Shown here piece after piece: positions 3,001-62,902 of a stretch of 64,000 nucleotides of DNA. Under the pieces are notes generated by a model. The model saw nothing but the letters and a program-made list of their open reading frames with translations. It was not told where the DNA came from and ran no database searches. Every line of letters begins with the position of its first letter. Within the stretch, counting starts at the first letter, position 1. Source of the DNA: Andalucia godoyi And28 (lineage: Eukaryota > Protista > Jakobida); contig VRVR01000010.1 of assembly GCA_009859145.1 (NCBI GenBank), positions 223,330 to 287,329 on the forward strand, read 5' to 3'. A program made the position numbers and the translations under genes.

Positions 3001-3324
3001 TGCTGCACTTACGGATATTGCTGCGAGGACATTACCTACTATGCATGCGATGCACAGAGTCAGCCGCGAGTTTATGGCAACGGGGCCGGCTCAACGTTGT
3101 CCTCTGTTGGGTACTATTCAGCATCTTGGACGATGTCCCCTTCTTATTCCGTTTTGCTGTCTTGCAATGCACACGTTACCAAGTCGTCTACAGCAAACAT
3201 GCCTCTTGTTATATCCTCATCAGCGTCCTCCATCACAGTTGGGCTGGTTAATGCTGGAGGGCAAGTTCGGTTCGACGCTGACAATGACCCCGTTCTGTCC
3301 TTTGTCTGTTATGGTCTATACTAG
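1..3324 (+). CDS. Large beta-rich tail-fibre/adhesin-like repeat protein, 5'-truncated by the window edge (>1107 aa)
   Basis: Frame is open from base 1 (atc ttc gga tct ttg...; base 13 is only a TTG). About 7 recurring G-x-[VI]-G-[ILM]-G-T-x-x-P...L-x-[VI]-x-G type motifs (e.g. GTVGLGTSSP, GRIGLGTATP..VLDVSGDV, GKIGINCGNP) spaced ~70-120 aa. N-terminal V/L-x-G-x-L-x-V repeats, Cys-rich insert near the C-terminus. No intron needed. Confidence 0.7.
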   Translation: MFGSLSGSGNMSVREDVFIFGSLSVSDMLVGSVAVESVFVDILQSARDAVFGDSLLINGDVSAISGAFCKSLVVSADAVFDGDILVNGSCNVSSETFVHGLAQFKRGLSVAGSVSANELLFSSNVTILGSMNISSPPQSETSPPSAVIGAMLMVGSDLTISGSLSSYAEVRVSEDAYFSGYTRWPVGAAVTGSSFLENLIVWDDVRLHGNLIVEGNASFQGILQTSADKVVFNSPLVCLDHFNRSTEYIWVLNSGIDVGTNRFMGLNRVLGDPSATAIELRPGNCSGLWVYANGTVGLGTSSPRKDAGLHIQGDVVLGTRLGERVLLTPFCNDNASDFSCFQFAPEWPALPNVWDFSLGVTVRENGYVGMHTISPCVMLDINSNNSFIEADIILRDGGLLSLKNASGSALIFDSVEAGVPTAGQGAGLRLRFDEDYSAAGLSAIVFEQTVGSGSYSGAKILFRTRMQGNPQSSLTGIIIDSANQRVAFGAQSPLMSFDAQLAVSFETDVVFHDLLKLDGFYTRTLFYSATNEQGIPDAQGVRIRYDERFDGPLKDALLFELTVPGSSAPSHAFEMIFINSALVSTSAMRIQGDGRIGLGTATPTLGKVLDVSGDVQVRSDLYLDGCFVFNLYSSMDRVLFHVPGDSLQEDFQVRIRPASDYPGIPPSEDVLVFEKLDADGILADGLIAFTSLKGASMYTNVVLRGDGKIGINCGNPLEKLFVEGTMGMRDDLLVTEMHYSTSPDIIYDFVFDLSAGDLLSNSLFRYSGTTASYSWKNVLPSSAPFRISTDSSGAGLNAIYIHSGTRASFGTDFDTGDTLYTIGSSRFEGVLYLNGQIQFDSDVFPFVDASLGGNGFVMRYDSSGNTVVLNRVAPSGTSNDFALFQDTTTLPGVVVQRTVSSAPATIGIRVDSPSSLYVLHVSGSVLVDGETTVVGKIYTVSSSAGPVYTSPTSSIGVDMGSLFGTRINRHFVVKTGCLVPHWYAVYCCCSTCWDATIGSYCCTYGYCCEDITYYACDAQSQPRVYGNGAGSTLSSVGYYSASWTMSPSYSVLLSCNAHVTKSSTANMPLVISSSASSITVGLVNAGGQVRFDADNDPVLSFVCYGLY

Positions 3325-6258: not shown

Positions 6259-6721
6259 CCTGGAATTTCTACGTGATGGTACGAGTCTGGAAAGCAGCAC
6301 CGATGACAATCAGAGGCTCGATATTCTGATACTCGTAAATGGATTGTGTCCAAATGCTGACTCCTGAATTTTTGATATGCTTATCTCCTCACCACCCCAC
6401 TTGGATTCCCAACGCGTACAAAACGTCCGTACAGATATCCACTCCTTTTTTGGGGATTATATACAGCAGTTGATTTTCGGTTCGGAAATGACGGCAGGTC
6501 AGCTGCAATGCCTGCAGCCTGCAGGGTCGTTTGACTCGCTCCTTAGCAACTCCCTGAAATCCGTTTTATGTCGTTTCGCCACTTTTTGCCATTCCTCCTT
6601 TTTTCCTTCTCTTTTTTTTCCTCTCTTGCAAGTAAACAAAGAAAGAAAAAAAGAAAGAAAAAAAGAAGAAAGGGTAGTCGTTAGCTTTAAAAGAAGAGAC
6701 GACGGAGAAGAAAAGAAATTC

Positions 6722-8977
6722 ATGCACCGCCATCCGCTTGATGCAGATGGAATGGTGGGTTCGCTTTTCCTGTCCTTGTGGAAGAAGCACCCTGAAACCC
6801 TCGACTCATGCTCAGGAGTCATTGTTCCGGACACAGTGCTCTACGAGCACGGCTTTCCGAGAGCCTGGCTTTCCAGCGATGTCGGAATGCGACCGACAAC
6901 TCGGCCAATGAGTGCCCCGTCATCTCCTCTCAGCCGTCCTGTGACTTCTCCAGGAGGTCGCGGTTCTCCTTCTCTTTCATCAACGGGGCTTCTTCACTGT
7001 ACGACCAAGAGAGAAAGAACCGTTGAAACGTACGAACTGAAAAAGAGGCAAGGAAAAGAAATAGATCCTCGAGCAGTTTATGCTGCGATGATCAAGCAGC
7101 CCTCCGAAGATCTCGACGCGGTTGCTATGTACATGGAAAAGCCGCATGAAAACTCTCCAACTGCGGTTGTGGAATACTTGACTCGAAAGGAAATCGGAGA
7201 GATGTTTCCAGATCCAAAGAATTCATCTGCTGGAAACAACAGAAGACAGCGGACGGGCTATCAGGGGATTGTCCAAAAGATGGTATATGGGGCATCCAAC
7301 TCGGTTTCTCTGATTCAAGCAACATGGTCACCATATCTGTGTATTGTCGACAGGAGAATCAACAAGAATGGAGCGGAGGACAAACGATTCACTCCATACG
7401 AGCGCGCAGTCACCCATGAGGGTCCACAGCACCATTCAAAATCAGTTCCGTGCGCACCACCCGTGGAAGATAAGGTTCGGCTGATATGCGAATGCATTGT
7501 GCGGCACGTGCAAGCCGTAGAGAACGTTGCGATCGCAAGAATGGTGCTGTACTTCAGACCAGACGCTCAAAACAGGCTGTACCTCTCCTGGTGTGATTCA
7601 ATGAGACTGAATTCAGCTGACAGGAGTCGTGAAATCAATCTTTCCATCTCGTACCAGACTCCAGAAAAACTCGCAAAGAAAAAGGAAAACTCGACGGTCG
7701 CCGTGGAGCGGGTCATTCCGTCCCTGGAATCTACTGTCAAGCCAGCCACAGAGAAGAAAGAATCAGAGCCATGTGCTTCATGCCCGGGATGCGACTGCCA
7801 GGTTCCGGTTTCAAAACTGCATGCAGCTGGGGTGGCGGCAATCATTGATTATTACGCGAAGCTCTGCAAACCGAGAGCATTCTCCCCTGCTGTCAGAACT
7901 CGGTTGGCAATTGACACAAATTCTCCGCGAACACCAAAAGGAAGCAGTACCAGAGACCGATCCAGGTCAGTTCTGAAGGGTCCGCAGTCGCCGTCCAGCG
8001 CGCGCTCCGGATCACCGACCTTTGGAAATTCAACAAGCCCGACGCATTCCAGCGGATGTTCCCCGACCTCGTTTTCGCCTGTGTCGCCGTTTTCTGCTAA
8101 CACAAAGGGGACTGGAGACGACAGTGATCCCATGCGTGGGACTTCGCCGCCTCCATTTGATGAATTAGCACAGGATGTCCGCGCACGAAGAATCGCGCAG
8201 GCATCGATACTGAACGAGCAACGAATGGTTTGTATGCAGGTCTGGCAAGAAGACATATGGTACCGGATTTACTCCCATTTTCTGGTGTCCAGAAATAACA
8301 TCAAAGTTCGCATTCCAGACATCTACAAGAGCGTGTCCATGTTGCTGAAATCGGACGAGAATCCGGTAACTTTGTACCAGATCCTAACCAGAGGACTAGC
8401 ACGAGTTCACATCAAGTTTGAAAGTGACGGGAACATCTGGGAGTTTCACTACTCTCCGAATATGACAATTGGGAAGTGGGAGTCTCTCGTGGGGGCAGTC
8501 GGAAGGGAAATGGAATCGATGCTCGAAGAACGCGAGGCCAAGTTTTGGGGTGTTTCCTTGGACGACATGAAAGAACTGGCTGCAAAGTCTGTTTCTTACG
8601 TCCTCACCGAAATAGAACGAAGAAGAAAAGAGGCATATCTCAAAGAGGCAGAGAAGCGGCAGCAAGAAAGAGAAGAAGAAGGAAAGAAACGGCGCCGAAG
8701 AGCAGGAACTATCATGGGAAGAACCTCATCGTCATCGTCCATTGCCTCCGACTTCTCTGACGATTCTCCTCCTCCTGTTCCGAACATTTTGAAAGGACTG
8801 TTTCCCGAAGCACAGAGTGTCGCAGACCTTGTGGACAAGAAACAAGCGGGCATTCTTCAGGCAGACGTTGTCTCCGTGAACGTTTGCCAGCAGTGCTATT
8901 TGACGTACAACAACCAGGGAAAGGCGCTCATTCTTCGCAGAAGTCCGAGTGTCATATCCAATCATTCTTCTATGTGA
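6722..8977 (+). CDS. Conserved-looking hypothetical protein: globular N-terminal domain, Ser/Pro-rich middle, C-terminal coiled coil
   Basis: The ORF-track sequence before 6722 runs through T- and A-rich spacer, so the likely start is MHRHPLDA. Ordered segment VPDTVLYEHGFPRAW...GIVQK...ATWSP...YERAVTHEG...RMVLYF...LYLSWC; possible Cys pairs (CASCPGCDC, CQQC). Confidence 0.75.
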   Translation: MHRHPLDADGMVGSLFLSLWKKHPETLDSCSGVIVPDTVLYEHGFPRAWLSSDVGMRPTTRPMSAPSSPLSRPVTSPGGRGSPSLSSTGLLHCTTKRERTVETYELKKRQGKEIDPRAVYAAMIKQPSEDLDAVAMYMEKPHENSPTAVVEYLTRKEIGEMFPDPKNSSAGNNRRQRTGYQGIVQKMVYGASNSVSLIQATWSPYLCIVDRRINKNGAEDKRFTPYERAVTHEGPQHHSKSVPCAPPVEDKVRLICECIVRHVQAVENVAIARMVLYFRPDAQNRLYLSWCDSMRLNSADRSREINLSISYQTPEKLAKKKENSTVAVERVIPSLESTVKPATEKKESEPCASCPGCDCQVPVSKLHAAGVAAIIDYYAKLCKPRAFSPAVRTRLAIDTNSPRTPKGSSTRDRSRSVLKGPQSPSSARSGSPTFGNSTSPTHSSGCSPTSFSPVSPFSANTKGTGDDSDPMRGTSPPPFDELAQDVRARRIAQASILNEQRMVCMQVWQEDIWYRIYSHFLVSRNNIKVRIPDIYKSVSMLLKSDENPVTLYQILTRGLARVHIKFESDGNIWEFHYSPNMTIGKWESLVGAVGREMESMLEEREAKFWGVSLDDMKELAAKSVSYVLTEIERRRKEAYLKEAEKRQQEREEEGKKRRRRAGTIMGRTSSSSSIASDFSDDSPPPVPNILKGLFPEAQSVADLVDKKQAGILQADVVSVNVCQQCYLTYNNQGKALILRRSPSVISNHSSM

Positions 8978-26216: not shown

Positions 26217-27107
26217 CTACAGATCCTGAACACCGAGTGCCTTTTTGTATTCTTCGTACAGAGTAAAGGTGATTGCTCCTGAACAACTGATCATGATGAG
26301 CCGAGGTGTCAGGCCTTTGAAAAACGACCGAACCCCTTCTTGCATCGCCATTGTTCGCACACAGTCCAAAAACCCACGATATCTCAACTCTTGGTGAACC
26401 AGGTTTTGAGTTTGAAGACGCGTTTTGACAGTGTCCAAAGGAGCAGTGAGAATCGATCCAATGGCTCCAGCCAACGCACCGCCAACGACATGTTCCCGAA
26501 GTTTTCGGAGTTGAGGTCTTTGGCCGCTCTCATCAGGAAGAGGTGGAATAAAAATATGCTGGGCATATTTTGCGCCTTCGTACACCGAGAAGTACAGTGC
26601 TGAAAACAGCCCGTCTCGAAGAACGGTTATTGTGTAACCTCGAAGCATAAAGGGAATACCGTTCTTGACATTCTCATTCACCGCTCTGACAGTTGCTCCT
26701 CCTCGAATTTGCAATTGCTGCTTGATCAAATCGAATGGAGTCCTTGCACAAGTGCCGATCAACCTGAGCGCAACACCAACAGCAACGGGCACGAGCGGAT
26801 GTCTTGAAAGATCACCGTCCCGATGCACGACACGCTGTTTAACCTCATCGTAAATTGTAAAGGAGACCGCAGCAGAAGGAATAATGTACAACAGACGCAT
26901 CGGGTATCCACGATACAGCGAAGAAATGCCATGGTCCCGGATCATGTGGGATCCAACCTGGAGGAAACTGCGAGGGCGAACAACCTGTCGGTCTGCTTGC
27001 AAACTGACTTTGATTGTGTCAAATGGATACAAGAAGGCTGACGAGGATAGACGTGCCATGGATCCGGCAAGCATGTTTTTCGCTGCATGATCATAGTCAA
27101 CCACCAT
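26217..27107 (-). CDS. Mitochondrial carrier family (SLC25) protein, SAM-carrier/mitoferrin-like
   Basis: Three PX[DE]XX[KR]X[RQ] motifs (PFDTIKV, PFDLIKQQ, PLDTVKTR) with G...LYRG/FFKG segments. Start MVVDYD; the upstream ORF extension is microsatellite. Confidence 0.93.
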   Translation of the reverse strand: MVVDYDHAAKNMLAGSMARLSSSAFLYPFDTIKVSLQADRQVVRPRSFLQVGSHMIRDHGISSLYRGYPMRLLYIIPSAAVSFTIYDEVKQRVVHRDGDLSRHPLVPVAVGVALRLIGTCARTPFDLIKQQLQIRGGATVRAVNENVKNGIPFMLRGYTITVLRDGLFSALYFSVYEGAKYAQHIFIPPLPDESGQRPQLRKLREHVVGGALAGAIGSILTAPLDTVKTRLQTQNLVHQELRYRGFLDCVRTMAMQEGVRSFFKGLTPRLIMISCSGAITFTLYEEYKKALGVQDL

Positions 27108-27157
27108 GTTCTCGATCACTTTTGCTGGAGAAAGTTTCTCGAACAAGAGCCAAAAAG

Positions 27158-27158
<1 letters not shown>

Positions 27159-27195
<37 letters not shown>
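27159..27195. repeat. (AC)n microsatellite upstream of the carrier gene
   Basis: About 18 AC units followed by AAC/AGC-rich simple repeats. Confidence 0.9.
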
Positions 27196-27196
<1 letters not shown>

Positions 27197-27400
27197 CCGC
27201 AGCAACAGCAACAGCACCAACAATAACAACAACAAACAAACAAACCAACCAAAAAAAGGAAAAACAACAAAAAAATGCGGCCACTTTAGGATCCAAAGAA
27301 GGCAGAACTCAAGTTTGCAGGTTTCTTTTTCTTGCTATTCCCCCCCGTCTTTCTGTTCTACAGCGACGATAGATAGAAATTTTATCTGTACATAGAAACA

Positions 27401-28456
27401 TTAAACTCCGAGAGAAAAAGGTTGAGCAGACGCGTCATCCGAATCATCGTTTTCGTCGTCACCAACAGATGGTGGCGGTGCCTCGGAGGGTACGGAAGAC
27501 AATCGTGACTTCGGGTCTGAAACTTCAGACTTGTAGCCCACTGTCTTCTTCCTTGGATGGGCATGTGCAACAGTTGCTTTCACTGCTTTCTCCCTCTTCT
27601 TAAACGCCGTATTAACGTACTTCTCCAGTTTTCGAAGAGTTGCAGTATCAAGCTTCTCCATGTCAATTTCGATTTCCTCGTCATCTCCAATGGAGTCCGC
27701 AGCGACTGCAGATTGGACTATTTTTGCGACTTCCACCAGTTCATCTTCGAACAACTGTCCAATTCGGAGAGTAAGTTCCTTTTTCTGTTCATAGGTCATC
27801 GGTACCAACGACACATCCGTCGAGACCACTGTCCTCGGGGAAACCGCTTTGGAGGACTTCTTTGAATCGGACGTCGCAGCCAGCTTCTTCTTCTTAGCCA
27901 GCGGTTCTTCTGCAGAAGGCGGCAACACAGCCGAAAGTGCCGCAGCCTGTTCATATGTGTGGGACTTACCTCGGAACTCCTCCAAACGCCTCACAACGTG
28001 TGTATCAAATTTGGAATCAAAAAACGCTTGCAAGTCCACAGCCATCCTGTGAATTGGGTTCTCTGCAGCATTGTACGCTCGGCAATTCTGAAAAATGAGC
28101 CTCATATCATGCGCAAAATCATCAACAGACGAATAGAGACCTCTATTCAGTTTGGATTCCACAGTGGCCAGGTCCATTGGTGACTTAATCACGTCAAAAT
28201 AATCCGGGATGCCTAACGCAACTGGGTCCACTGGTTCGAGGAATGGCCACGACAGCTTCTTGTTATCCTTCACAAAACGAAGCACACGTTCACAAGCTCG
28301 CAGTTCTGGCAAAAGTTTTCCCGGTTCGGATCCCAGACGAGGAGATCCTTCTTCTTCTCCAGGATAGCCGTGATTTGCTGCTCTCCTCTTTCTCTTTGTT
28401 GAACCATCATCCGTAGAAGCTCGACGATCCACAGAGTCTCCATCCACGGTCGACAT
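27401..28456 (-). CDS. BET/GTE-type protein with one bromodomain and an ET domain
   Basis: WPFLEPVDPVALGIPDYFDVIKSPMDL.TV..KL..G.Y..VDDFA.D.RLIF.NCRAYN bromodomain; MTYEQKKELT..I..L....EEIEIDMEKLDTATLRKLEKYV ET domain. Confidence 0.93.
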   Translation of the reverse strand: MSTVDGDSVDRRASTDDGSTKRKRRAANHGYPGEEEGSPRLGSEPGKLLPELRACERVLRFVKDNKKLSWPFLEPVDPVALGIPDYFDVIKSPMDLATVESKLNRGLYSSVDDFAHDMRLIFQNCRAYNAAENPIHRMAVDLQAFFDSKFDTHVVRRLEEFRGKSHTYEQAAALSAVLPPSAEEPLAKKKKLAATSDSKKSSKAVSPRTVVSTDVSLVPMTYEQKKELTLRIGQLFEDELVEVAKIVQSAVAADSIGDDEEIEIDMEKLDTATLRKLEKYVNTAFKKREKAVKATVAHAHPRKKTVGYKSEVSDPKSRLSSVPSEAPPPSVGDDENDDSDDASAQPFSLGV

Positions 28457-29523
28457 TTTGAATTCTGAAGGATGTGGTAGGGGAGACGTGTAAACGGGGT
28501 GCTGACAAAAACCACAATCACGGACAACTGGGAAATGCGAGGGAAGAAATCGAGCGAAGTAAACAAAAAAACCCTGTGAAGGCAACAGGAAAGACAAGGA
28601 GATATGCTCGAAACGCCAAATGACACAGCGCAAAAACTTAAAGATCAAAGAAAAGTAATTAAAAAACAAACAAACAAAAAACCCACCAAAAATAGTAAAA
28701 TGAAATGCGTAAACAAAAGAAGAAGAAAAAGGATAAGCCAGAAGAGAGGAAGAGAGAAGAAGAACCAGAAAAAAAAAAAAAAAAAAGAAAGAAAGTGTCT
28801 GGGAAAACGGAGGGAACGTGAAGTGTTCTGGGCGCGGGTTGCGCTGACATGACGGGGGGCGGAACTTGTCAGAGCTCGGAACTCACCAAAAAAGTCCAAA
28901 CTTCAAGTCTGTGGTACAGCTGGCGGAAACACGCGAAACTGCCGGCCCCTTCTCCGCGACGAGCCATGAATTTTCAGCAACGATTAACGCGGCACGAGTT
29001 TCCGACTTCTCGATTATGATCCGAGGCTGAAAATCGCTTCAACGAGGGACGGAGTGCCCACTGGCATGGACTAGTTTTCTGTTTAAACGCCCCAATTCTT
29101 TAGAGGCATTGCCTTTTGAGAACAGCGAATTCGCATTTCGGATAGTCGGAAAATTTCTGGCTTCAATCTTCGCCAGTTCGGCTGAGGAATCTCTGCATTA
29201 CATGCATTTCTCTCTGGCGAAAATCCACGTGTTTTCCCAATCCAAAAAAAATATATAAAAAATTCCAAAAAATCAGAAAACAGATAAACAACTAAATAAA
29301 TTCGTATACATGGAAAAAAGAAGCAGTTCTTAATCTCGGGGACATGTGAGGTTTTGCGATGCCTTTCCGGTGCGCGGACAGCGGACTGGGCTCTTTGGGA
29401 AACTTGAGTATCAGATGAGTCGCCGGTTGTTTTTTCCCGCAGCAGCAGCCACCCGGGCAATAATTCAGTCTCCAATGTGCCAAGCAAATGTCCTTCTTAG
29501 TTCTCTTCCTCTTGGTTTCAGCC

Positions 29524-30048
29524 ATGAGGAGGACGGACTTGGCGGTTGCTGAGCGGCGATCGGTCGAGTCGCTTCTTCGAGATCCGCTGTACAATCGAAG
29601 TGGGCGTCGGTGGGTTTCTCCATATGAAGATGGTCGCCCCTCTCTTCGGAGACTTGACTATGCGGACCTTCCCTTTGAAGACCGGCCAACCTATGTCCCC
29701 TCTCAGCTGCTTGCAAACCCAGACTTTGGAAACTTTCGGATTCGCAGAAGCTTTACTACAGAGTTATGGCTTCAGGACGGGGAAACAGTCGCTGTCCTTG
29801 GTGACGGGAAAGAAAGAGAATTCAGAACGCACTACTCGCCAATGTACCGTCGACCTTTCTTCTCTGGCTGGATTGGTAGGCTTTTGCAGTTCTTAGCCCT
29901 GGATAGATTGTTTGGACTTCATATTGACTCCCACAAGAAATCCCGGACTCGTAGCGTCCTACTTGTTACTGCAAAGCTTCTGCCTTTGAACGAGCAAAGA
30001 ACGGCAACTGACAAGAGTAATGACGATGTCAGTGTCTCGGAGTCTTGA
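29524..30048 (+). CDS. Small protein resembling the C-terminal part of the bacterial secretin domain (GspD-like)
   Basis: RRSFTTELWLQDGETVAVLG ... LDRLFG ... KKSRTRSVLLVTAKLL parallels the secretin consensus R...T.V.V.DGET.V.GG ... LG.LF ... K.ELLIFITP.I. Alternative start at 29488. Confidence 0.55.
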   Translation: MRRTDLAVAERRSVESLLRDPLYNRSGRRWVSPYEDGRPSLRRLDYADLPFEDRPTYVPSQLLANPDFGNFRIRRSFTTELWLQDGETVAVLGDGKEREFRTHYSPMYRRPFFSGWIGRLLQFLALDRLFGLHIDSHKKSRTRSVLLVTAKLLPLNEQRTATDKSNDDVSVSES

Positions 30049-31186
30049 CCAGTGTGACCTAGCCGGAATGTCAATATGTTTCTTCTTTGAACTCGTTTTT
30101 CTCTAGAGCTGTGTACTCGATTTCGTGGATTTTCGTTTTCCCTCGACGAGAGAGCGTTTCTGTGTCTGCTTCGTTTCCAGAGGCAGCGACGGACTGTGTT
30201 TTTTTCCAAAGAACAGTCGCTTCTCTTGATTCTCCGCATGTCTGTTAGAAACGATACTTCCTCTTTCCAGATAAATTGTTTTTAAAAAAATTGTTCGTTT
30301 AATGTTGCGAAGCACGAGTCTCGCGCGGCGCCACACCAGCAGTCCGTATGAGTACTTCCTTTTTCAGTTCGGCGCCTTCTTCCCAATCGCTGCTGCGTTC
30401 AGGCGCCCGAGCACGCTCCTGCGCCAGCGGCCTCGCACATGGTCTGCTGGAGCAACCGCAAAGAAGCAAATAGCAGTTTTCGAGAAGCATCGGAAAACTC
30501 GGATTCTCGAATTCTCGGAACTCGGGTCACACAAGGTGTGCGAGGCTCTGGGGCGAATTCCGGAGTGCGGGGGGGTGCATCTCTTACAAAACGTTTGCGA
30601 GCATGAGAAGCTGCACGACAGGTGGACCAAGGAAAGACCTGATGCTTCGGACCTCGAACGTGTGCGGTAAATCCCTGTTCGGAGTTGAGCAGGGTGAGCA
30701 GACCGAGGACTTGACTGCACGATGTGGTCAGATGACGCAGTCTGCCGACACCAACAGCCTTCCACCCCACCCAGTCTTCTCGGACGGAGTGTAGTTGTGG
30801 ACATTCGACCATTTGTTTTGAGTCCTATCATCAACAGCCATCACTTACCATCGTTCCTGTTTCGTCCTTCGTGTGAGAGCACGACATTTTGCAATCTGCG
30901 GCAGTTCTGGGGGGTCCCAGTCGTTAACGGACTTTTGATTTGGCGGGAAGGTTCCCGAAAAGGGAATCCCGTGAATTCAGACCTAGTCCCCAGGTTTTAG
31001 GGTTTCAACTTTCATAATGGACCCCCCCCCCCCCCCTCCCTGCAGTTTCCTTTGGGTTCTCGTCTTGTGACAAGACAATAAGCTATTTTTTCCCCTGGCG
31101 TTCCCTGCTCATTTTTCTGTTCATTTTCAGTGATTGCAAATCATTTTTTTCGTGGGTTATTAACGCCTTGCAGTGGAGAGCGAAAC

Positions 31187-32692
31187 ATGGATATCCGCCC
31201 TCGATTGGATACTTTTGGCCAAGAGGTAGAGCTTTCCTTTGGCCATTTTGCGGATGCAGCGGACTTTGATGGTCGTTCCGAACTGTACTCTCGTCCTTTT
31301 GACATCCACACATCTGCTCACTCTTCCGCACTTCCTATTCCATACGTATCCATCAGCGAGGAGCTCGCGCACGAGAGCGAAGATTACGACGCGAACTACC
31401 CCTCCTACCACTCATCTTCTGTTCACCGAGGCTCCACTCGATCTGCTTCGCCACTCCGAGATGAAGCCTCAAACTCGTCAGAGTCATCCGGAAATAGCAT
31501 GCCGTCCTCCTCCGCCTCTCACTCCAGGCTTTTTATGTCTGTCAGCGCAAGAGATGACACGGCAGCGGCAGTACACCGCTCTCGTCCTGTTTCGGGGATG
31601 GAGTTACCGTCGTCATCCTATTCAGTATCTCCCAGGCAATCAGATCTGCTCTCGAGCGCGGGAGGCTCGCGGTCTCCTCTCTCCTCGGCATCGTCTGTTG
31701 TGCATTCTGGAAGATCCATGTCTGTCGTCCCCCAGGATCTGTATGTGTCCTCCAAGTCGATGAGAAAACCGCCTCCCGTGCTGGAGAACTGGGAACTCAG
31801 CGACAGATTTTGCATCACACATCCTCAGCATCCATTTGAGCTCTGTTCTGCTTTCGGCTTTGGCATTGCTCCTGCTCCAGTCGATATTTTCGTCGGGCAC
31901 CGTTGGAAGCGCGGGAATACTATATCGGACATTCCGTCAGGATTTGGCAAGCTTCGTGTTTCCTCCTTTGTATTCTGGATCAACAATCGCGAGTTTCTGT
32001 CCAACAATGAAATTTCTCATGTTGCTGTATCTGCACATGGATGTTCTTCCGGGTCTCAGGATGTTTCGGACAAAGTTATCAAATCATGCAAGCTCAGCAC
32101 GGTAGAGCGAATTCCCGAAGTAGTACTCTGCGACATCAACTGGAAGACCTGCGAGAAGGATTTTGCCTTGTGTCTCAACCTTGTTTTCCGGGATACGAAT
32201 GCTCCGGGAAGCTGGAATACGCTGTCTTTTCGCTCTCGCCCCGGAATCAAGTTCTCCATTTCGGCGGTTGTTGCGGATACGGTGTACTCTCCTCGCCGGA
32301 CACCCGTGATTCCTGCTTCTCCCTCCAAGCGCATTGAGGCGCCTGTCAACGTGGAAGAGCCCTGCATTCTAAACAAGAAATTCCGCCGCTTCACAATTGA
32401 GGGAAATGGCGGAGGAGCCAGTTCGATAGTCTCTCACCTTGCGGATTCGTCCTCTCTCCCTGTTTCTCATATTCTATCTGGCGCGACCAACTTTGGAACT
32501 CCGAACCGTGAAGATCTTCTCAATCGTACGGATGGATCACTGACTGACCAGTCATTTGGCACTGCGATCAGTGAATCTGAAGTTCCTGATACTTTCTCTC
32601 ATTTGTACGAGCATGACGACATGATTCAGATTTCGACAGATGCTCCGGAGCCGGTTCATCAAGATGCGCAATTGTCTCCGCCGTATGCATAA
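31187..32692 (+). CDS. Hypothetical protein: Ser-rich disordered N-terminus, central ~160-aa beta-rich domain
   Basis: Long ORF with ATG at 31187; ordered block WELSDRFCITHP...PGIKFSISA flanked by low complexity. Confidence 0.75.
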   Translation: MDIRPRLDTFGQEVELSFGHFADAADFDGRSELYSRPFDIHTSAHSSALPIPYVSISEELAHESEDYDANYPSYHSSSVHRGSTRSASPLRDEASNSSESSGNSMPSSSASHSRLFMSVSARDDTAAAVHRSRPVSGMELPSSSYSVSPRQSDLLSSAGGSRSPLSSASSVVHSGRSMSVVPQDLYVSSKSMRKPPPVLENWELSDRFCITHPQHPFELCSAFGFGIAPAPVDIFVGHRWKRGNTISDIPSGFGKLRVSSFVFWINNREFLSNNEISHVAVSAHGCSSGSQDVSDKVIKSCKLSTVERIPEVVLCDINWKTCEKDFALCLNLVFRDTNAPGSWNTLSFRSRPGIKFSISAVVADTVYSPRRTPVIPASPSKRIEAPVNVEEPCILNKKFRRFTIEGNGGGASSIVSHLADSSSLPVSHILSGATNFGTPNREDLLNRTDGSLTDQSFGTAISESEVPDTFSHLYEHDDMIQISTDAPEPVHQDAQLSPPYA

Positions 32693-32937: not shown

Positions 32938-33687
32938 TCAGGCGAGATGCTCACTCATCTGGTCGTTGAACTGAGAATAAGGTCCAGATTTTGGTTTCTG
33001 CCCAACCAAACGAAGCCTTTTTGCTCCTTGCAAAAACAGCAGACCACACGCAAACGAAAACAGAATGACAATAATGAAGCCATACAATGCGAACCCGTAG
33101 GCTAGAGAGACAGAACCATTGGAAGAGTATGTCGTGGAGATCGGACGGAAATTCTCCAAAAAGGTTTTGAAGTCGTCCACGGATGGTTTCAAGGAGTACC
33201 ATGTAATGACAATCCCCAGACTGAAGAGTCCAACAACGATCGAAAGAGCTCCGCCCATCAAGGCAAAAGAAGACGCCTTGTACGCGTCGACATGATATGA
33301 CCCAACCAGCCCGCAAAGACAGACAAGCGCGGAAACAACGACGACACTCGACGCAAACCCACTGGTCGCGGCGGCTGCAGCCACGATTTTGTCAATGAAG
33401 GTCCTGCCACCGGAAGACGACACATCCACCTTGCTTTCTGCTTGAATGACAGGAAAGCTGAACAATGTCGGTGTCATGTACGCATCTGTCGAAGCATCGG
33501 CAGGGACCGACGATGCGATCTGCAGAATGACACCCTGCAAAACCGGACTGACTTTGATGTAGTCTTTGTGCGTGCCATACGTGTACTCGTAAGAAAACAC
33601 AGCCCAGGACTCGGAAGCCAATGTGCCATAAAGTACGCAAGTTGTGGCAATTGTTATTAGATATGTTATGAATACTAGCTTGTTCAT
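32938..33687 (-). CDS. Claudin/PMP22-like four-TM membrane protein
   Basis: TM1 followed by W in the loop (LASESWAVF), large first loop, TM2-TM3, then a Y-G-F-A-L motif (SLAYGFAL) before TM4. Confidence 0.6.
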   Translation of the reverse strand: MNKLVFITYLITIATTCVLYGTLASESWAVFSYEYTYGTHKDYIKVSPVLQGVILQIASSVPADASTDAYMTPTLFSFPVIQAESKVDVSSSGGRTFIDKIVAAAAATSGFASSVVVVSALVCLCGLVGSYHVDAYKASSFALMGGALSIVVGLFSLGIVITWYSLKPSVDDFKTFLENFRPISTTYSSNGSVSLAYGFALYGFIIVILFSFACGLLFLQGAKRLRLVGQKPKSGPYSQFNDQMSEHLA

Positions 33688-33966
33688 GGTCAATAATCTG
33701 CTCTCTTTGTACAATGAAAACGGCGTCGCAAAACCACTTGACCCCCCGCAAAAACAAAACAACGATTAATAGATAGGTACCCGATAAAAACAAAATGCAA
33801 TCGAAAGATCGTAAGGAGATGCCTCGCAGGACCGTGGCCTCGGGAGCGCCGTCGAAGGAACGATTGCGGAAGTCCACAGCAAGCATCAACCGCAGATTTT
33901 TTGTTGTCGTCGCTTTTGTTTTGCTTCACCTTTCCGCTGCTCCGACAGCCTCTGCTTGGAGAACAA

Positions 33967-34085: not shown

Positions 34086-34820
34086 ATGAAGTTCTTTTCT
34101 TTGGCGACGACCTTTCTGCTGGGACTGAGTTTTGTCTCTCCGTTTTATGCATTGTTCCAAAGGGAATGGGTCCAGTTGCAGTACACAAATAACGATCCTA
34201 TCATCCCAGATTATGTGCTTGGATACAGTGTCCGTCTCGACATTTCCATCGTGTCGCTTGGCACGTTTCAAGTGACTAAAGTTCTTCCTTCGTACGCGCA
34301 TCTTCCGAACCTGGTTGCACACTGCAGCTACTGCAAGGACCACAGTGCTATTTGCGCATCGTCCGAGGTTGGAGAAGTAGAATTGAACGGATCGTGGAAC
34401 GATAAGTTGGATTTCTTTACGCACTTGTCGGATGCGTGCATTGCAATCCTCGTGTTGCTTTCATTATCCAGTCTGAGTCTGTTTGCAGCGTTGAATATGT
34501 ACTTGAACGCAATGCTGTCCAGCGACCCAAAGGTTATCCGTTTCCGGTCCATTATCACAGCAGTCCTCAATTTGCTGGGATTTGTATTCAGCTTGGCAGC
34601 CGTCATCACTTTCGTGTGCACCATTCCTCATGAAGACAAGATGCGTTCCATCATTGGGAACCCTCCCAAAGATGGATCGTCGTATAATGTTCGCTACAGC
34701 ACAGGGTTTGCACTGCTACTTGCCTGCCTCATCATTTCTGGCCTTAATGTTGGCCTAATTTGGTGGACTGCTCGCTTAGAAGCATCTCGGAAGGGCCGAT
34801 CCTTGTCAAACATCGCGTAG
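34086..34820 (+). CDS. Claudin/PMP22-like four-TM membrane protein
   Basis: TM1, W in loop 1 (FQREW), Cys in the extracellular loop (HCSYC...C, AC before TM2), TM2-TM3, YSTGFAL before TM4. Confidence 0.65.
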   Translation: MKFFSLATTFLLGLSFVSPFYALFQREWVQLQYTNNDPIIPDYVLGYSVRLDISIVSLGTFQVTKVLPSYAHLPNLVAHCSYCKDHSAICASSEVGEVELNGSWNDKLDFFTHLSDACIAILVLLSLSSLSLFAALNMYLNAMLSSDPKVIRFRSIITAVLNLLGFVFSLAAVITFVCTIPHEDKMRSIIGNPPKDGSSYNVRYSTGFALLLACLIISGLNVGLIWWTARLEASRKGRSLSNIA

Positions 34821-50047: not shown

Positions 50048-50091
<44 letters not shown>

Positions 50092-52309
50092 GCAGGCACC
50101 TTCTCCGGATCCGTGTCACGAGGAGCCGGCGGTTGTGATGGCGTCTCCCAAAAGCGTTAAGGAGGATTCAGCACGTGTACAGAAACAGCCAGAAGTAATC
50201 GGTGCGAACGATGTCGAGTTGAGTGTCGTATCGGACGATGAGCTGGATCCGTCCATTGGCGGTGGCGATGAGGTTTGGGCCACTCATGAAGCGGCAATGC
50301 TGCGAGTCCCTGTGTGTCCCTCTGAAGATTCTGCATTGACAGGGACTTCTGTTTCAAGCACGCGGACGTCAGTATCGCCAAATGCACATCGCTTGCTTTC
50401 AGAAGGCGCAGCGCGCGACGCACACTGCGGGCACTTGGATGGTTTTGCGGAGGAGGAAGATGCCTCGGAAGCTGCGCATGTCAAGGTCAAGATCTCATCG
50501 CTGCATGAATACAGGGCTCCATACATTTCTTCCAAATCGATTCGTGAGGTTCACAAGGAGTATGCGCACAAGCAAAGGTCTGCCACAAGTAGAGTCAGGA
50601 ATCCACATCATCTCAACGGCGGTCAGCAGTCGAGTACGACGGCAACTGCGAGAAGTCTGGGGAAACGCAGCTCTTCTTTTTCCAACATTCGAAGTGAGCG
50701 CGAGATTAAAGAAAAACAGAGGATTGTCATGGAGTTGCAGGATGCGCTGCTTACGGCTTCCGCAAAGAAGGGCGCTTTGACACAACATGACCGTGAGGAC
50801 GCACGCAGGAGAGCTCTAGAAAGAATTCGAGAGAAGAAAGGGATTCTGGAAGTTGTGCCACCAAGTCTTGCGACGATCGCCACATCGCACACTGCGTCTG
50901 CACTTTCCCTGGTTAGTCCATCGTCTTCAGGGTCGTTGCTACATTCTCAGTCTCATTCGCAGGTCCAGCCAAACAGCACTTCCAGCACTGGGCAGCAGCA
51001 TAGGGCACGTTCTGGCTCCTACGTCGCGTCCGCCGAGTCCCGTAGTAAACCGCTTGATGGAAGCGCTGCCAATGATATGGAAACTGACGATGGAGCCCTC
51101 GTGTTTGTTGTGGACTTGTGGACGGGACATGTGGTTCCGAGAAGTGAGCACAAGGTGGAGAACGTCCCCCCTGCGCATCTGCCAATCCCACATCCCCCTG
51201 CTCCGTCCTATGCCGCAACCGCCACGCGACCATCGCATCTGCGAACACAGAGCTCTAAAAATTCCATCACATCGGTTTCTTCTTCCAACTCCACGGCCAC
51301 TTCCACATCCGCCGCATTGGTTGTTACATCCCCGTCTGCATCTGGGCGGTCAAAGCTGATCACCACCAAGAGAAGTGCAAACACGAGCTACTCTGCACTC
51401 AGTCCGTGGGCATCCGAATCGACTACGTCTGTAATGTCGCCACCTCCACCTGTGGATATTGCCCTCTCCTCCTCCTCCTCGTCGTCGTTATCATCGTTAT
51501 CATCCTCATCAGCTGCTGCTGCTGCAGCAGTTGGTGCTTCCGCCCAAAGCATTTCTGCCTCGGGCTCTGCGGAGGCTGGCACTGCAAAGTCTCCCGACAG
51601 CAATAACACTACGATGACTTTGGACGAATTGCAAGACGATTCACTGACCAATCTCGAGGCATTGATTGCCAAAGAACAAGAAGAGTTGCAAATATTGCTT
51701 GATGCCAGCCGTCGACATTATGAGAGAAGGGACACTGCCACCGACGAATTTTCCCTGTCGGAACAGGAGTTTTCGGATCAGGAAGACGACCGTAACTCGA
51801 TTGTCGACGAAAGCGACGGCCACCACTCTCGCGACGACGTGTCTTCCACAAGCGGGTCGTATCTGGATGCACGCAGTTCTGTCGCACCGTCCCCAGTCAC
51901 AGCGACTGCTGCAAACCGGAGGTCTTCTGCAGATTCGGAGATTTGCAGTGCAGCCGATATGCATCCGGCAAACGAGAGCTGTGCATCAGATATGAGCACT
52001 AATTCTTCGGTGCAATGCTTGGATCGTACGGTCCTCCATTTCCCCCCATTTTCCCCGTTGCAAGTTGCTGGGAACATGATTTTGCACGCAGAGTCGCAGA
52101 ACAGAGTGCTTCCTGATTCGAATGAAGACGAGGAGGAGCAGGACTCTTCGAAGCCCATTGAAGAGCGCGACGAATTCCGAGTTCTGGGCAAAATTCCACC
52201 CGAGTGGGATGAAGGAGAGTCGAACAGCGAAAGCCAGGAGTCCATGCAGTCGCCAATAGTGCCGCACCGATCTTTGCAGTCTCTCGATGAATCGTTGGAT
52301 AACATGTAA
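49937..52309 (+). CDS. Hypothetical Ser-rich disordered protein; exons 49937-49963 and 50096-52309, N-terminus MFCCRPKRR
   Basis: A 27-nt first exon joins in phase 0 to the long ORF (APSPDPCHEE...). Two short coiled-coil segments; no catalytic domain recognised. Confidence 0.7.
49964..50095 (+). other. Spliceosomal intron (132 nt, phase 0) containing a (GTT)15 microsatellite
   Basis: GTATGC donor, TTCTAAC branch site (CTAAC at 50038-50042), (GTT)n at 50047-50091, TGCAG acceptor. Confidence 0.75.
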
Positions 52310-61246: not shown

Positions 61247-62397
61247 CTATTCCTTTTCGTGGAGCTTGTCGCTCAGATCATGCCAGTAGACCGACGACTC
61301 TTCTCCGCCTGAGCCGCGAAACCCCTTTTTCCGTCGTCCGCCACGCATTCGCTGCACCATTGCAGTCATATCATGAAACGCATAGTGATGCGTCTCTCGC
61401 TCTGATCTTGCGCGTCCTCGGTGCGGAGTCGGCACGCCCACTTGTTGCACGCTCGAGCCTGCAAACGACGAAGTCGAAGGACTTGACTTACCCGACAGCT
61501 GTGGCTCGATGTCCATGTTCCGTGGACTCGGCAGCAGTCTGTTGTTTGGCTGTCGATGCACAGACGCCGACGCCGACGACGTCGGAGAAGACGGACTCGC
61601 ATACATTAGGGGGCTGGAATATCGTTGTAATGGTGTAGGTGGAGTAACGTCAATCATAGGCAAGCCAGTCCGATCGCGGAATTCAGACGTCCTTGCAGGG
61701 AAGGTCTGCTGCTGCTGCTGTTGTTGTTGAAGGAGTGGATCGGCCACGGCACTAAACGGAAGAAAAGGGGCATCACTGTGTCGACGCGGGCTACTTGGTT
61801 TCGCAAAGTTATGGTAGGCGGGGGCTGGGGTTCTAAAGGGAAATGCAATACCAGGAGGCACATGATGGGAGAGATAAGCAGCTGACGGGGGCAGATGCGA
61901 AGGAACGGACATGCTTCGATCGGTCCGAGAAAGAGGATTGTACGACAAAGATGATGACGACGACGGCCCGCCGTACTGGACGTTCGGCAGCGATCCCGAG
62001 TGGTGATATGAACGAAAAACAGTGCTGGAAGAGTTGGTGTAGTCTATGGAGCCTAATCGCGACGAGAGGGCAGTGGATGTGGAATCCGAAGGCGGGATCC
62101 CCGCGAAGCCGATCCGGGGGGACCTGTTATCGGGAGAGAACGGCACAAAGGGAGACAGAGGGAGCGGGACACTTGCATTCGATGGGCACTGCAGAGACGC
62201 CAAGTACCTTTCGTCCGACAGCTTCCATTCATACTTGGAGGTGGGGACTTGCAGGCTTGAGGGAGCAGGAAGTATGAGAGATGGGTAGGCAGTGTGGACC
62301 GGAGCGAGAGCTGGATCGAGTGGTCGGTTCGCCTTGATCGCCATTTGCATGTCATTGCTGTTATCAGTACTGCTCCTTCTGCTACTCATACTACTAT

Positions 62398-62456
<59 letters not shown>

Positions 62457-62608
62457 TTGTTACTGCTACTGCTACTGTTACTGCTGTTAATATTGCAACC
62501 ATTTGTGTTGGAGGCGACATCGCTGACGATGCGCTCTTCGTCGTCAACGCTATCTTGGCGAGACCTCTTTCTCGACTTGTACAAATCGGGATCCATATAT
62601 TGATGCAT
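61247..62608 (-). CDS. Hypothetical S/P/Q-rich disordered protein with basic NLS-like motifs
   Basis: Long ORF with likely start MHQYMDP; SRKRSR and GGRRKK motifs, poly-Ser from a triplet expansion (~62390-62480) and poly-Gln. Confidence 0.65.
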
Positions 62609-62902
62609 CTTCGCTGCCGACAGTGAACAAGAAAATGGATACAGGACGGGAAAATATTCTGGAAAAAATTTCGTTTGCCATCGAACCGAGTCAGAAAGAG
62701 AAGAAGCAGCTGTCCTTTTTGTTTTTGGACGGGGTTTTCCCCCTTCGTTTCCTGGTCGAGAATAGGGGGGGTTTCTATTCTTGTGCTCTTGCAGTCCCAG
62801 TTCCAATGGACTTCAGCCGGATGACACCTTAAACTTCCGGTTCCCGATGCCAGTTTCGGAAGGAAGCTGACGACCGATGCGAGCGAACGTCAATGCGTAT
62901 GC

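What the first reader, a model, noticed from the sequence alone, without database searches (positions are those of the whole stretch)
29524..30048. Stand-alone secretin C-domain-like protein: candidate part of a mitochondrial type II secretion-derived apparatus
Seen: in a 174-aa ORF, 29743-29985 encodes R-S-F-T-T-E-L-W-L-Q-D-G-E-T-V-A-V-L-G, a spacer, L-D-R-L-F-G, then K-S-R-T-R-S-V-L-L-V-T-A-K-L-L. This has the order and spacing of the terminal beta-hairpins of bacterial secretins (R..T.V.V.DGET.V.GG / P.LG.LF / K.ELLIFITP.II). Known: GspD/E/F/G homologues, including split and GspD-like pieces, were reported as mitochondrial proteins in jakobids, heteroloboseans, malawimonads and hemimastigotes (Horvathova et al. 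2021); their function is unresolved. Inference: this is a truncated GspD-like subunit that lacks the N-domains and most of the barrel and must work in trans.
Basis: partly seen in the sequence, partly recalled or inferred. Interest (0 to 1): 0.78.

Follow-up and report, generated by a model that had tools for sequence, protein, structure and literature searches.

The report
Published Andalucia godoyi GspDL gene

Summary
The ORF at 29524-30048 (+) is real and encodes 174 aa. It is 100% identical to 'Andalucia godoyi GspDL, KAF0852925.1' in Supplementary Data 1 of Horvathova et al. 2021.

I tested the secretin link independently. HMMER-level methods see nothing: Pfam, NCBIfam, PDB sequences, the 5.8-billion word-indexed search and the 1.84-billion-protein exhaustive profile search all returned no secretin. 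Profile-profile comparison does see it. GspDL against 24 non-redundant bacterial GspD C-domains gives P=2e-4 (Prob 44-47%). After trimming to the C-terminal segment and adding mitochondrial GspD, it gives P=1.2e-6 (Prob 91%). The alignment is collinear over about 70 columns and scores above all 700 shuffles. AlphaFold2 models are low-confidence (pLDDT 64), and Foldseek finds no secretin.

The gene is under strong purifying selection (pN 0.2, pS 0.9). No other Gsp/Gcp gene lies in the window; the partners GspD, GspE, GspDN1 and Gcp7 lie outside it, and GspD is on a different contig.

Verdict: observation confirmed, interpretation supported, already known. Function as a mitochondrial outer-membrane pore co-subunit remains inferred.

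The parts
29524..30048 (+). GspDL coding sequence (174 aa plus stop), single exon
   Evidence: ORF. 100% identity over 174 aa to A. godoyi GspDL KAF0852925.1. pN about 0.2 against pS about 0.9 versus two environmental orthologues.
29524..29709 (+). Poorly conserved N-terminal region, predicted disordered (residues 1-62). Its length and composition vary across the family.
   Evidence: AF2 pLDDT below 50 for residues 1-3, 9-34 and 41-71. Alignments A2/A3 show this region as variable, often Y/G/N-rich.
29713..29736 (+). Family-specific motif A-N-P-D-F-G-N-F (residues 64-71). It has no counterpart in bacterial secretins.
   Evidence: P66 and F68 are invariant or nearly invariant in A2 and A3. The motif lies upstream of the hhalign-aligned region.
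29743..29799 (+). Secretin-like beta segment R-R-S-F-T-T-E-L-W-L-Q-D-G-E-T-V-A-V-L (residues 74-92), aligned to bacterial T-R-T-I-x-x-x-V-L-V-x-x-G-E-T-V-V-L-G-G-L
   Evidence: hhalign alignments. G86 and T88 are invariant; D85 and E87 are nearly invariant.
29854..29892 (+). Degenerate counterpart of the secretin amphipathic helical loop: P-F-F-S-G-W-I-G-R-L-L-Q-F (residues 111-123)
   Evidence: hhalign pairs G-W-I-G-R-L-L-Q-F with bacterial I-P-L-V-G-Q-L-F-R. AF2 predicts helices at 116-123 and 126-129. The Eisenberg hydrophobic moment is only 0.14, so amphipathicity is not demonstrated.
29893..29925 (+). GspDL-specific 11-residue insertion L-A-L-D-R-L-F-G-L-H-I (about residues 124-134), highly conserved within the family
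   Evidence: It appears as a gap in the secretin template in both hhalign alignments. G131 is invariant; D127, R128 and L129 are nearly invariant.
29926..29988 (+). Terminal secretin-like beta strand D-S-H-K-K-S-R-T-R-S-V-L-L-V-T-A-K-L-L-P-L (residues 135-155), aligned to bacterial T-S-T-E-R-A-K-R-N-L-M-V-F-I-R-P-T-I-I-R-D
   Evidence: hhalign. AF2 strand at 134-149. D135 and K138 invariant, V148 nearly invariant.
29989..30045 (+). Non-conserved acidic/polar C-terminal tail (residues 156-174), absent from most family members
   Evidence: Alignments A2/A3: most homologues end at ...L-P-x.
29488..29523 (+). In-frame upstream ATG plus 11 more codons (MSFLVLFLLVSA), probably 5' UTR rather than coding
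   Evidence: The closest homologue (L001) has no upstream ATG between the preceding stop and its MRRS start. The published model starts at 29524.

Best explanation
The ORF is the nuclear gene for GspDL of the jakobid Andalucia godoyi. GspDL is a small, soluble-looking protein. Its conserved C-terminal ~95 residues descend from the last ~75 residues of the bacterial T2SS secretin (GspD) C-domain. That region comprises the beta segment with the DGETVVL turn, a degenerate and lengthened equivalent of the amphipathic helical loop, and the terminal beta strand. GspDL lacks N0-N3, the gate/inner barrel, the beta-lip and the S-domain.

The most likely mode of action is as an accessory structural subunit. 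After import it would associate with the likewise truncated mitochondrial GspD, and possibly with the separate GspDN1-3 polypeptides, at the mitochondrial outer membrane. There it would contribute strands and a membrane-proximal helix to a hetero-oligomeric pore of the miT2SS.

Shown here: the identity of the gene, purifying selection, family membership, and collinear profile-level similarity to secretin C-ends.

Taken from the literature: strict co-occurrence with GspD/E/F/G, and detection of the N. gruberi orthologue in the mitochondrial proteome.

Inferred: co-assembly with GspD and a role in the pore.
For: Identity: 100% over 174 aa to the published A. godoyi GspDL KAF0852925.1.

Real gene: three orthologues at 72-73% aa identity with saturated synonymous sites (pS 0.89-0.96) and pN 0.19-0.23.

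Family: 26 members in the 5.8-billion-protein search and 9 cluster representatives in the exhaustive 1.84-billion-protein search. Every member carrying a species name is a heterolobosean (Naegleria, Willaertia, Acrasis); the remainder are unnamed entries from metagenomes, read-archive assemblies and transcriptomes. None is a bacterial secretin.

Secretin link: hhalign of GspDL against the bacterial GspD C-domain gives Prob 44-47%, P=2e-4. Trimmed GspDL against bacterial-only gives Prob 74.6%, P=2.6e-5. Against bacterial plus mitochondrial GspD it gives Prob 90.7%, P=1.2e-6 over 72 columns. The score beats 500 column shuffles and 200 block shuffles.

Positive control: mitochondrial GspD hits Pfam Secretin PF00263 in 6 of 10 members (best 1.5e-6), PilQ in the PDB, and the bacterial profile at Prob 90%.

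Topology: the AF2 strand-helix-strand layout in the ordered part is compatible with strand-AHL-strand.

Literature: GspDL was found by phylogenetic profiling and co-occurs with miT2SS. [quoted passage not shown] The 2023 review places GspD and GspDL together in the outer-membrane pore (PMC10128026).
Against: No HMMER-level signal to any secretin from the single sequence, from the 14-sequence profile against the PDB, or from the 26-sequence profile against 1.84 billion proteins.

Direct hhalign between GspDL and mitochondrial GspD is weak (P=0.007-0.056).

Both AF2 models are low-confidence (pLDDT 63.7 and 64.4, pTM 0.35). Foldseek against the PDB returns no secretin and nothing below E=1.

The hallmark AHL residues (V-P-x-L-G-x-I-P) are lost, and the predicted helix has a low hydrophobic moment.

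The trimmed-template P-values are somewhat optimistic, because I chose the template boundaries after seeing the first alignment.

Mitochondrial targeting predictions for the A. godoyi protein are equivocal in the paper's own table: TargetP 1.1 mTP 0.596 at reliability class 5, TargetP 2.0 'OTHER', MitoFates 'no'.

No interaction or localisation data exist for GspDL itself beyond N. gruberi proteomics.
Confidence: 0.6

Rival explanations
1. GspDL is a genuine secretin-derived fragment but not a pore-wall subunit. It would act as an assembly, capping or regulatory factor for the GspD ring, for example by templating or limiting oligomerisation, or by substituting for the missing S-domain/pilotin function. 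It would bind GspD through beta-strand augmentation.
For: Same homology evidence as the main explanation. GspDL has lost the AHL hallmark residues and carries a conserved 11-residue insertion and an ANPDFGNF motif that are absent from secretins, which suggests a new function. The paper reports that mitochondrial GspD alone forms oligomers and pores of variable size in vitro, so GspDL is not needed for pore formation as such. TMHMM finds no transmembrane segment.
Against: No data distinguish this from a stoichiometric pore subunit. The retained segments are exactly the barrel strands that flank the AHL in secretins.
Confidence: 0.22
2. GspDL is not homologous to secretins. It would be a eukaryote-specific protein of the miT2SS-associated pathway, and its two amphipathic beta segments and DGET turn only mimic the secretin C-terminus.
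For: All sequence-profile (HMMER) searches and both structure searches fail to reach secretins. The untrimmed hhalign probability is only 44-47%. Similarity to mitochondrial GspD, the expected closest relative, is marginal.
Against: The alignment is collinear end to end, covers the very end of the secretin domain just as mitochondrial GspD does, and scores above every one of 700 shuffles, including block-preserving ones. Adding mitochondrial GspD to the template raises rather than lowers the score. The strict co-occurrence with other T2SS-derived genes would then be a coincidence of function and mimicry.
Confidence: 0.15
3. The ORF is a chance open frame or an unexpressed pseudogene in an intergenic region.
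For: It is short (174 aa), has no Pfam hit, and many overlapping mechanical ORFs occur in this region.
Against: It has 26 homologues with invariant motifs. pN is far below pS. It is a published, curated gene model, and the N. gruberi orthologue was detected by mass spectrometry.
Confidence: 0.01

Closest known systems
Eukaryotic GspDL family (Horvathova et al. 2021, Nat Commun 12:2947; A. godoyi KAF0852925.1)
   Same: It is the identical sequence (174/174 residues). It shares all family motifs: NPDFGNF, DGETV, RTHYSP, GWxGRL, LDRLFGLH and the terminal xFVTAxxLP strand.
   Different: Nothing: this is the type entry for A. godoyi. Compared with heterolobosean and malawimonad members it has a different, non-Y/G/N-rich N-terminus and an extra 19-residue C-terminal tail.
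Mitochondrial GspD (truncated secretin of miT2SS; A. godoyi KAF0852335.1)
   Same: Both are ~160-230-aa stand-alone proteins that correspond only to the C-terminal end of the secretin C-domain. Both lack N0-N3, the gates and the S-domain, and both are encoded in the same genomes.
   Different: GspD still hits Pfam Secretin (6 of 10 members) and PilQ in the PDB, and keeps the AHL motif P-L-x-x-I-P-F-L-x-x-L-F. GspDL does neither. GspDL keeps the bacterial DGETVVL turn better and has an 11-residue insertion after the AHL equivalent. Pairwise profile similarity is only P=0.007-0.056. The genes are on different contigs (249 kb against 410 kb).
Bacterial T2SS secretin GspD C-domain (Pfam PF00263; e.g. 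E. coli K-12 GspD, b3325)
   Same: Collinear profile-level similarity over the last ~70-79 residues of the secretin domain: T-R-T-I...V-x-V-x-x-G-E-T-V-V-L-G-G-L / I-P-x-L-G-x-L-F-R / K-R-N-L-M-V-F-I-R-P-T-I-I.
   Different: Bacterial GspD is ~650 aa, with N0-N3, a double beta-barrel with gates, a beta-lip, an AHL and an S-domain. GspDL covers roughly a quarter of the C-domain, fails the Pfam model, and has lost the V-P-x-L-G-D-I-P residues.

Membership tests
Eukaryotic GspDL (miT2SS-associated) | Sequence identity or orthology to the published family members | tested here: met
   100% identity to the A. godoyi entry. 29-73% identity to the other 13 sequences aligned, 11 of them published members and two environmental relatives. 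Family-profile E=1.2e-53.
Eukaryotic GspDL (miT2SS-associated) | Conserved family motifs in the C-terminal ~95 residues | tested here: met
   Invariant F68, G86, T88, R101, Y104, W116, G131, D135, K138 in A2. G86, T88, R101 and Y104 are invariant across 26 sequences.
Eukaryotic GspDL (miT2SS-associated) | Co-occurrence with core Gsp genes (GspD/E/F/G) in the same genome | tested here: met
   None is in this window: tblastn for Gcp7 and GspDN1 was negative, and no T2SS Pfam domain occurs in the 33 ORFs scanned across the window. A. godoyi GspD, GspE and GspDN1 are listed in the paper's data. The A. godoyi GspD protein was retrieved from NCBI with that name.
Eukaryotic GspDL (miT2SS-associated) | Mitochondrial localisation | not testable with these tools
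   There is only literature evidence. N. gruberi GspDL is flagged 'M' in the mitochondrial proteome. In silico targeting scores for the A. godoyi protein are equivocal.
Secretin C-domain (Pfam PF00263) | Match to the Pfam Secretin HMM at or near the gathering threshold | tested here: not met
   0 of 14 GspDL sequences hit PF00263 even at E<=10. Control: 6 of 10 mitochondrial GspD sequences hit it.
Secretin C-domain (Pfam PF00263) | Collinear profile-profile similarity to secretin C-domains, above chance | tested here: met
   hhalign P=2e-4 untrimmed, and P=2.6e-5 and 1.2e-6 trimmed. The score is above all 700 shuffles. The probability is only 44-47% in the unbiased untrimmed run.
Secretin C-domain (Pfam PF00263) | Conserved amphipathic helical loop motif (V-P-x-L-G-D-I-P-x-L-G-x-L-F) | tested here: inconclusive
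   Only G-x-L-[LF]-[RQ] is retained. The P/L-G/I-P residues are lost. A helix is predicted at 116-129, but the hydrophobic moment is 0.14.
Secretin C-domain (Pfam PF00263) | Complete double beta-barrel (outer barrel with beta-lip, plus inner barrel/gates) | tested here: not met
   The aligned region covers template columns 184-262 of 325 only. There is nothing upstream in GspDL to supply the lip or the gates.
Secretin C-domain (Pfam PF00263) | Secretin_N (N1-N3) and N0 domains | tested here: not met
   No PF03958 or other hit. The N-terminus is predicted disordered.
Secretin C-domain (Pfam PF00263) | Fold similarity to solved secretin structures | tested here: inconclusive
   Foldseek against the PDB with the full-length and domain-only AF2 models gave a best E of 1.2-2.0 and no secretin in either list. 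The models have pLDDT ~64 and are monomers of a fold that exists only as a 15-mer.
Secretin C-domain (Pfam PF00263) | Formation of stable, detergent/urea-resistant multimeric membrane rings | not testable with these tools
   This was shown in the paper for mitochondrial GspD only, not for GspDL.

The most novel reading that the evidence does not exclude
GspD and GspDL have kept complementary halves of the ancestral secretin C-terminal signature. GspDL keeps the DGETVVL turn strand. GspD keeps the P-L-x-x-I-P-x-L-x-x-L-F amphipathic loop. This would be because they are obligate partners that alternate in a hetero-oligomeric ring. The mitochondrial outer-membrane pore would then be a new two-gene, minimal-strand barrel rather than a GspD homo-oligomer. 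The conserved 11-residue LDRLFGLH insertion and the ANPDFGNF motif of GspDL would form the eukaryote-specific interface.
Probability: 0.2. Interest if true: 0.6.

Novelty: already known. Interest (0 to 1): 0.15.

Why it matters
The miT2SS is one of the more surprising proposals about the early mitochondrion. [quoted passage not shown] GspDL is one of its least understood parts. This particular gene, its name, its truncated secretin-like nature and its genomic partners were all published in 2020-2021, so the finding adds no new object.

This check adds three things:
- A quantified, independent view of how thin the secretin link is. It is invisible to HMMER even across 1.84 billion proteins and invisible to Foldseek on AF2 monomers. 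It is visible only at the profile-profile level, though clearly above shuffled controls.
- The mapping of the AHL equivalent and of a GspDL-specific insertion.
- A few unannotated family members in newer heterolobosean genomes and metagenomes.

Tried and rejected
1. Single-sequence hmmscan against Pfam and NCBIfam, and phmmer against PDB sequences: no secretin. The best PDB hits (a telomere-binding protein and Atu0240, E 0.19-0.69) are noise.
2. A 14-sequence GspDL profile against PDB sequences returned only SPT6 at E=2.3, which is noise. Per-member Pfam scans gave FecR, RecD_N and MtrB at E>0.03, also noise.
3. Word-indexed profile search of 5.8 billion proteins and exhaustive hmmsearch of 1.84 billion representatives: the named hits are heteroloboseans and the rest are unnamed environmental entries; no bacterial secretin appeared and no bridge sequence to GspD.
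4. My third large protein search, with the mitochondrial GspD profile, was run at E<=1e-3. It returned only 3 eukaryotic GspD proteins and no bacterial secretins. In hindsight the threshold was too strict, and the search was wasted for its intended purpose. I obtained bacterial GspD C-domains instead from E. coli K-12 gspD and 80 genome loci.
5. AF2 full-length and domain-only models plus Foldseek against the PDB were uninformative.
6. Hydrophobic-moment test of the putative AHL helix: not amphipathic by the Eisenberg scale.
7. Search for linked Gsp/Gcp genes in the window: tblastn for Gcp7 and GspDN1 was negative. No neighbouring accession in KAF085291x-294x appears in the paper's list. Peptides from five neighbouring ORFs are absent from the supplement. 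Pfam on 33 ORFs, counting the GspDL reading frame itself, shows only ordinary eukaryotic families.
8. Synteny with the two environmental homologue contigs: none beyond the gene itself.
9. Considered and rejected the longer 186-aa model starting at 29488.
Full report
**1. What is at the coordinates**

The + strand carries one open frame from 29488 to 30048 (186 aa).
- R74/R75-S-F-T-T-E-L-W-L-Q-D-G-E-T-V-A-V-L-G93 begins at 29743/29746.
- L126-D-R-L-F-G131 follows.
- K139-S-R-T-R-S-V-L-L-V-T-A-K-L-L153 ends at 29982.

The coordinates are therefore right to within a codon.

**2. Whose genome, and is the gene known**

The window is gene-dense (about one long ORF per 2 kb), essentially intron-free and 45-53% GC, with no tRNA or Rfam hit.

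The neighbouring ORFs encode ordinary eukaryotic proteins:
- Nearest neighbours: a mitochondrial carrier at 26217-27296 (-) and a BET bromodomain protein at 27401-28669 (-).
- Further out: M17 aminopeptidase, TMEM43, a VPS8-like propeller, WD40, cofilin, a DEAH helicase, an AAA ATPase, NmrA, a cytosolic carboxypeptidase M14, LRR and DUF1275.

A full-text search found Horvathova et al. 2021 (PMC8134430). Searching its supplementary tables for peptides of the ORF returned an exact hit: 'GspDL / Andalucia godoyi / KAF0852925.1', with the same 174 residues from MRRTDLAV... to ...DDVSVSES. tblastn of that entry against the window gives 100% identity over residues 1-174 at 29524-30045.

The compact, nearly intron-less organisation matches the description of the ~20-Mb A. 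godoyi genome (PMC7050145). The finding is therefore a rediscovery, from raw sequence, of a published and named gene.

**3. Is it a real gene**

The first large search returned only two relatives, at 73% and 77% identity to the query in BLASTP local alignments. One is from a Logan assembly (SRR15116022) and one from a JGI metagenome (3300042934).

Codon-level comparison over 125-155 aligned codons gives 72-73% amino-acid identity. Synonymous sites are saturated (pS 0.89-0.96) and pN is 0.19-0.23. This indicates strong purifying selection on the protein.

The closest homologue has no in-frame ATG upstream of its MRRS start, whereas the window has one at 29488. This supports the published start at 29524.

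**4. The family**

I aligned the published GspDL sequences of 11 other taxa, taken from the supplement, with the window protein and the two environmental relatives. The N-terminus is variable and often Y/G/N-rich. The C-terminal ~95 residues are well conserved. Invariant positions are F68, G86, T88, R101, Y104, W116, G131, D135 and K138. The characteristic motifs are ANPDFGNF, DGETV, RTHYSP, GWxGRL, LDRLFGLH and the terminal xIFVTAHxLP.

A profile search of 5.8 billion proteins found 26 members. The named ones are all heteroloboseans (Naegleria, Willaertia, Acrasis) and the others are unnamed entries from metagenomes, read-archive assemblies and a transcriptome; none carries a Pfam domain and none is a bacterial secretin.

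The exhaustive HMMER search of 1.84 billion cluster representatives with the 26-sequence profile found 9 proteins at E<=1e-3, again all GspDL-like. At HMMER sensitivity the family is small and isolated.

**5. Independent test of the secretin link**

*Negative results*
- The single sequence has no hit in Pfam or NCBIfam, and only noise in PDB sequences.
- The family profile has only noise against PDB sequences.
- None of the 14 members touches PF00263, even at E<=10.

*Positive control*
- The 10 published mitochondrial GspD sequences hit PF00263 in 6 cases, best 1.5e-6.
- Their profile finds PilQ secretins in the PDB at E=0.05.

*Profile-profile comparison*
- I took gspD from E. coli K-12 and fetched 80 bacterial GspD C-domain loci.
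- I reduced these to 24 sequences below 80% identity and ran hhalign.
- GspDL against bacterial GspD gives score 35, P=2.4e-4 and probability 44% for the 14-sequence alignment. The 26-sequence alignment gives P=8e-4.
- Mitochondrial GspD against bacterial GspD gives P=1.6e-6 and probability 90%.
- GspDL against mitochondrial GspD is weak (P=0.007-0.056).
- With GspDL trimmed to residues 55-158 and the template trimmed to the last 77 residues of the secretin domain, the bacterial-only comparison gives probability 74.6% and P=2.6e-5.
- With bacterial plus mitochondrial GspD as template, probability rises to 90.7%, P=1.2e-6 and score 38.6 over 72 columns.

*Empirical nulls*
- 200 column shuffles against the untrimmed bacterial profile: mean 13.2, sd 2.4, max 21.0, against a real score of 32.4.
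- 300 column shuffles against the merged profile: max 22.4.
- 200 shuffles of intact 8-column blocks: max 35.9, against a real score of 38.6.
- Reversed profile: 12.5-15.3.

I chose the trimmed template boundaries after seeing the first alignment, so those P-values are somewhat flattering. The untrimmed run is the unbiased one.

**6. What aligns with what**

The alignment is collinear and runs to the very end of the secretin domain, as it does for mitochondrial GspD:
- R-R-S-F-T-T-E-L-W-L-Q-D-G-E-T-V-A-V-L-G pairs with T-R-T-I-Q-N-A-V-L-V-K-T-G-E-T-V-V-L-G-G-L.
- G-W-I-G-R-L-L-Q-F pairs with I-P-L-V-G-Q-L-F-R-Y. This is the amphipathic helical loop (AHL), which the literature describes as the most conserved part of T2SS secretins (PMC6532946).
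- An 11-residue GspDL-specific insertion follows (L-A-L-D-R-L-F-G-L-H-I).
- K-S-R-T-R-S-V-L-L-V-T-A-K-L-L pairs with A-K-R-N-L-M-V-F-I-R-P-T-I-I.

One point appears in these alignments that I did not find in the parts of the papers I read. GspDL keeps the bacterial DGETVVL turn better than mitochondrial GspD does. Mitochondrial GspD keeps the AHL motif (P-L-x-x-I-P-F-L-x-x-L-F) better than GspDL does.

**7. Structure**

AlphaFold2 with the 26-sequence alignment gives mean pLDDT 63.7 and pTM 0.35. Residues 1-71 are essentially disordered. The ordered part has a strand at 88-104, helices at 116-123 and 126-129, and a strand at 134-149. A domain-only run (19 sequences) gives the same topology at pLDDT 64.4.

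Foldseek against 350,542 PDB chains returns nothing below E=1.2 and E=2.0 respectively. Neither list contains a secretin. A few long-hairpin pore formers and flagellar LP-ring proteins appear at non-significant scores.

I regard it as uninformative rather than contradictory. The models are poor, and a two-strand-plus-helix fragment of a fold that exists only in a 15-mer is a weak Foldseek query.

The predicted helix is not clearly amphipathic (Eisenberg moment 0.14).

**8. Genomic partners**

No other Gsp/Gcp gene lies in the 64-kb window:
- tblastn with A. godoyi Gcp7 (KAF0852907.1, the nearest by accession number) and GspDN1 (KAF0853016.1) is negative.
- No other accession in KAF085291x-294x occurs in the paper's tables.
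- Peptides from five neighbouring ORFs are absent from the supplement.
- No T2SS Pfam family appears in any of the 33 ORFs scanned, a count that includes the GspDL reading frame itself.

The partners do exist elsewhere in the genome. GspD is KAF0852335.1, retrieved from NCBI with the name 'Type II secretion system (T2SS) D-like protein (GspD) [Andalucia godoyi]' on a 249-kb contig. GspE is KAF0852419.1, and there are others.

**9. How it most likely works**

*Shown*
- GspDL is a conserved, selected protein.
- Its C-terminal domain is, at profile level, the strand / AHL-like / strand end of a secretin domain.
- It lacks everything else: N-domains, gates, beta-lip and S-domain.

*From the literature*
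- The family has exactly the phylogenetic distribution of the miT2SS.
- N. gruberi GspDL is in the mitochondrial proteome.
- Mitochondrial GspD alone oligomerises and forms pores of variable size in vitro.
- The authors and a 2023 review propose a multi-polypeptide outer-membrane channel built from GspD, GspDL and GspDN1-3.

*Inferred*
- GspDL joins GspD by beta-strand pairing as an accessory or alternating subunit of that channel.

*Probabilities*
- About 0.6 for the pore co-subunit reading.
- About 0.22 for a homologous but non-pore assembly or regulatory role.
- About 0.15 that the secretin resemblance is not homology.
- About 0.01 that the frame is not a gene.

**10. Verdict**

Novelty: already known, because it is the exact published gene with the same interpretation. 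Interest as a finding is low, although the underlying biology is remarkable. The residual open question is what GspDL actually does and whether it contacts GspD. That is best addressed by multimer modelling and by co-purification from N. gruberi mitochondria.

Noticed in passing
window 27159-27195: A perfect (AC)18.5 dinucleotide microsatellite. It lies in the mechanical 5' extension of the mitochondrial-carrier ORF 26217-27296 (-), where it translates as CVCVCV. It is probably in the 5' UTR or intergenic spacer shared with the BET bromodomain gene rather than coding.
   Followed up: partly
window 29488-29523: An in-frame upstream ATG would add a hydrophobic MSFLVLFLLVSA extension to GspDL, giving 186 aa. 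The closest homologue lacks such an ATG, so it is probably not translated. Transcript 5'-end data would settle it.
   Followed up: partly
P0007 (Willaertia magna), P0009 (Acrasis kona); Clear GspDL family members (E about 1e-60 to 1e-64) in newer heterolobosean genomes are labelled only 'hypothetical protein'. This extends the family's known distribution within Heterolobosea beyond the 2021 list.
   Followed up: no
L001:1570-2037 (Logan SRR15116022) and L002:7-426 (JGI 3300042934): Two environmental GspDL copies are 72-73% identical to the A. godoyi protein, on contigs of 62% and 50% GC. They show no synteny to the window beyond the gene itself. They are presumably undescribed Andalucia-like jakobids.
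   Followed up: partly
window 32938-33762 (-) and 34086-34820 (+): A divergently oriented pair of predicted multi-pass membrane proteins with no Pfam hit. Their mutual similarity is weak (BLASTP E=0.011 over 60 residues). They may be distant paralogues.
   Followed up: partly
window 13-3324 (+), 6377-8977 (+), 31130-32692 (+), 50048-52309 (+), 61247-62806 (-): Several long ORFs (519-1103 aa) have no Pfam family at E<=1e-3. One is the 520-aa Ser-rich ORF immediately downstream of GspDL. None matches the published Gsp/Gcp lists where checked.
   Followed up: partly
alignments (GspDL residues 74-155 against mitochondrial and bacterial GspD): The two mitochondrial secretin-derived paralogues retain complementary bacterial motifs. 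GspDL keeps D-G-E-T-V-V-L. GspD keeps the AHL motif P-L-x-x-I-P-x-L-x-x-L-F. I did not see this noted in the parts of the papers I read, and it may hint at hetero-oligomerisation.
   Followed up: partly
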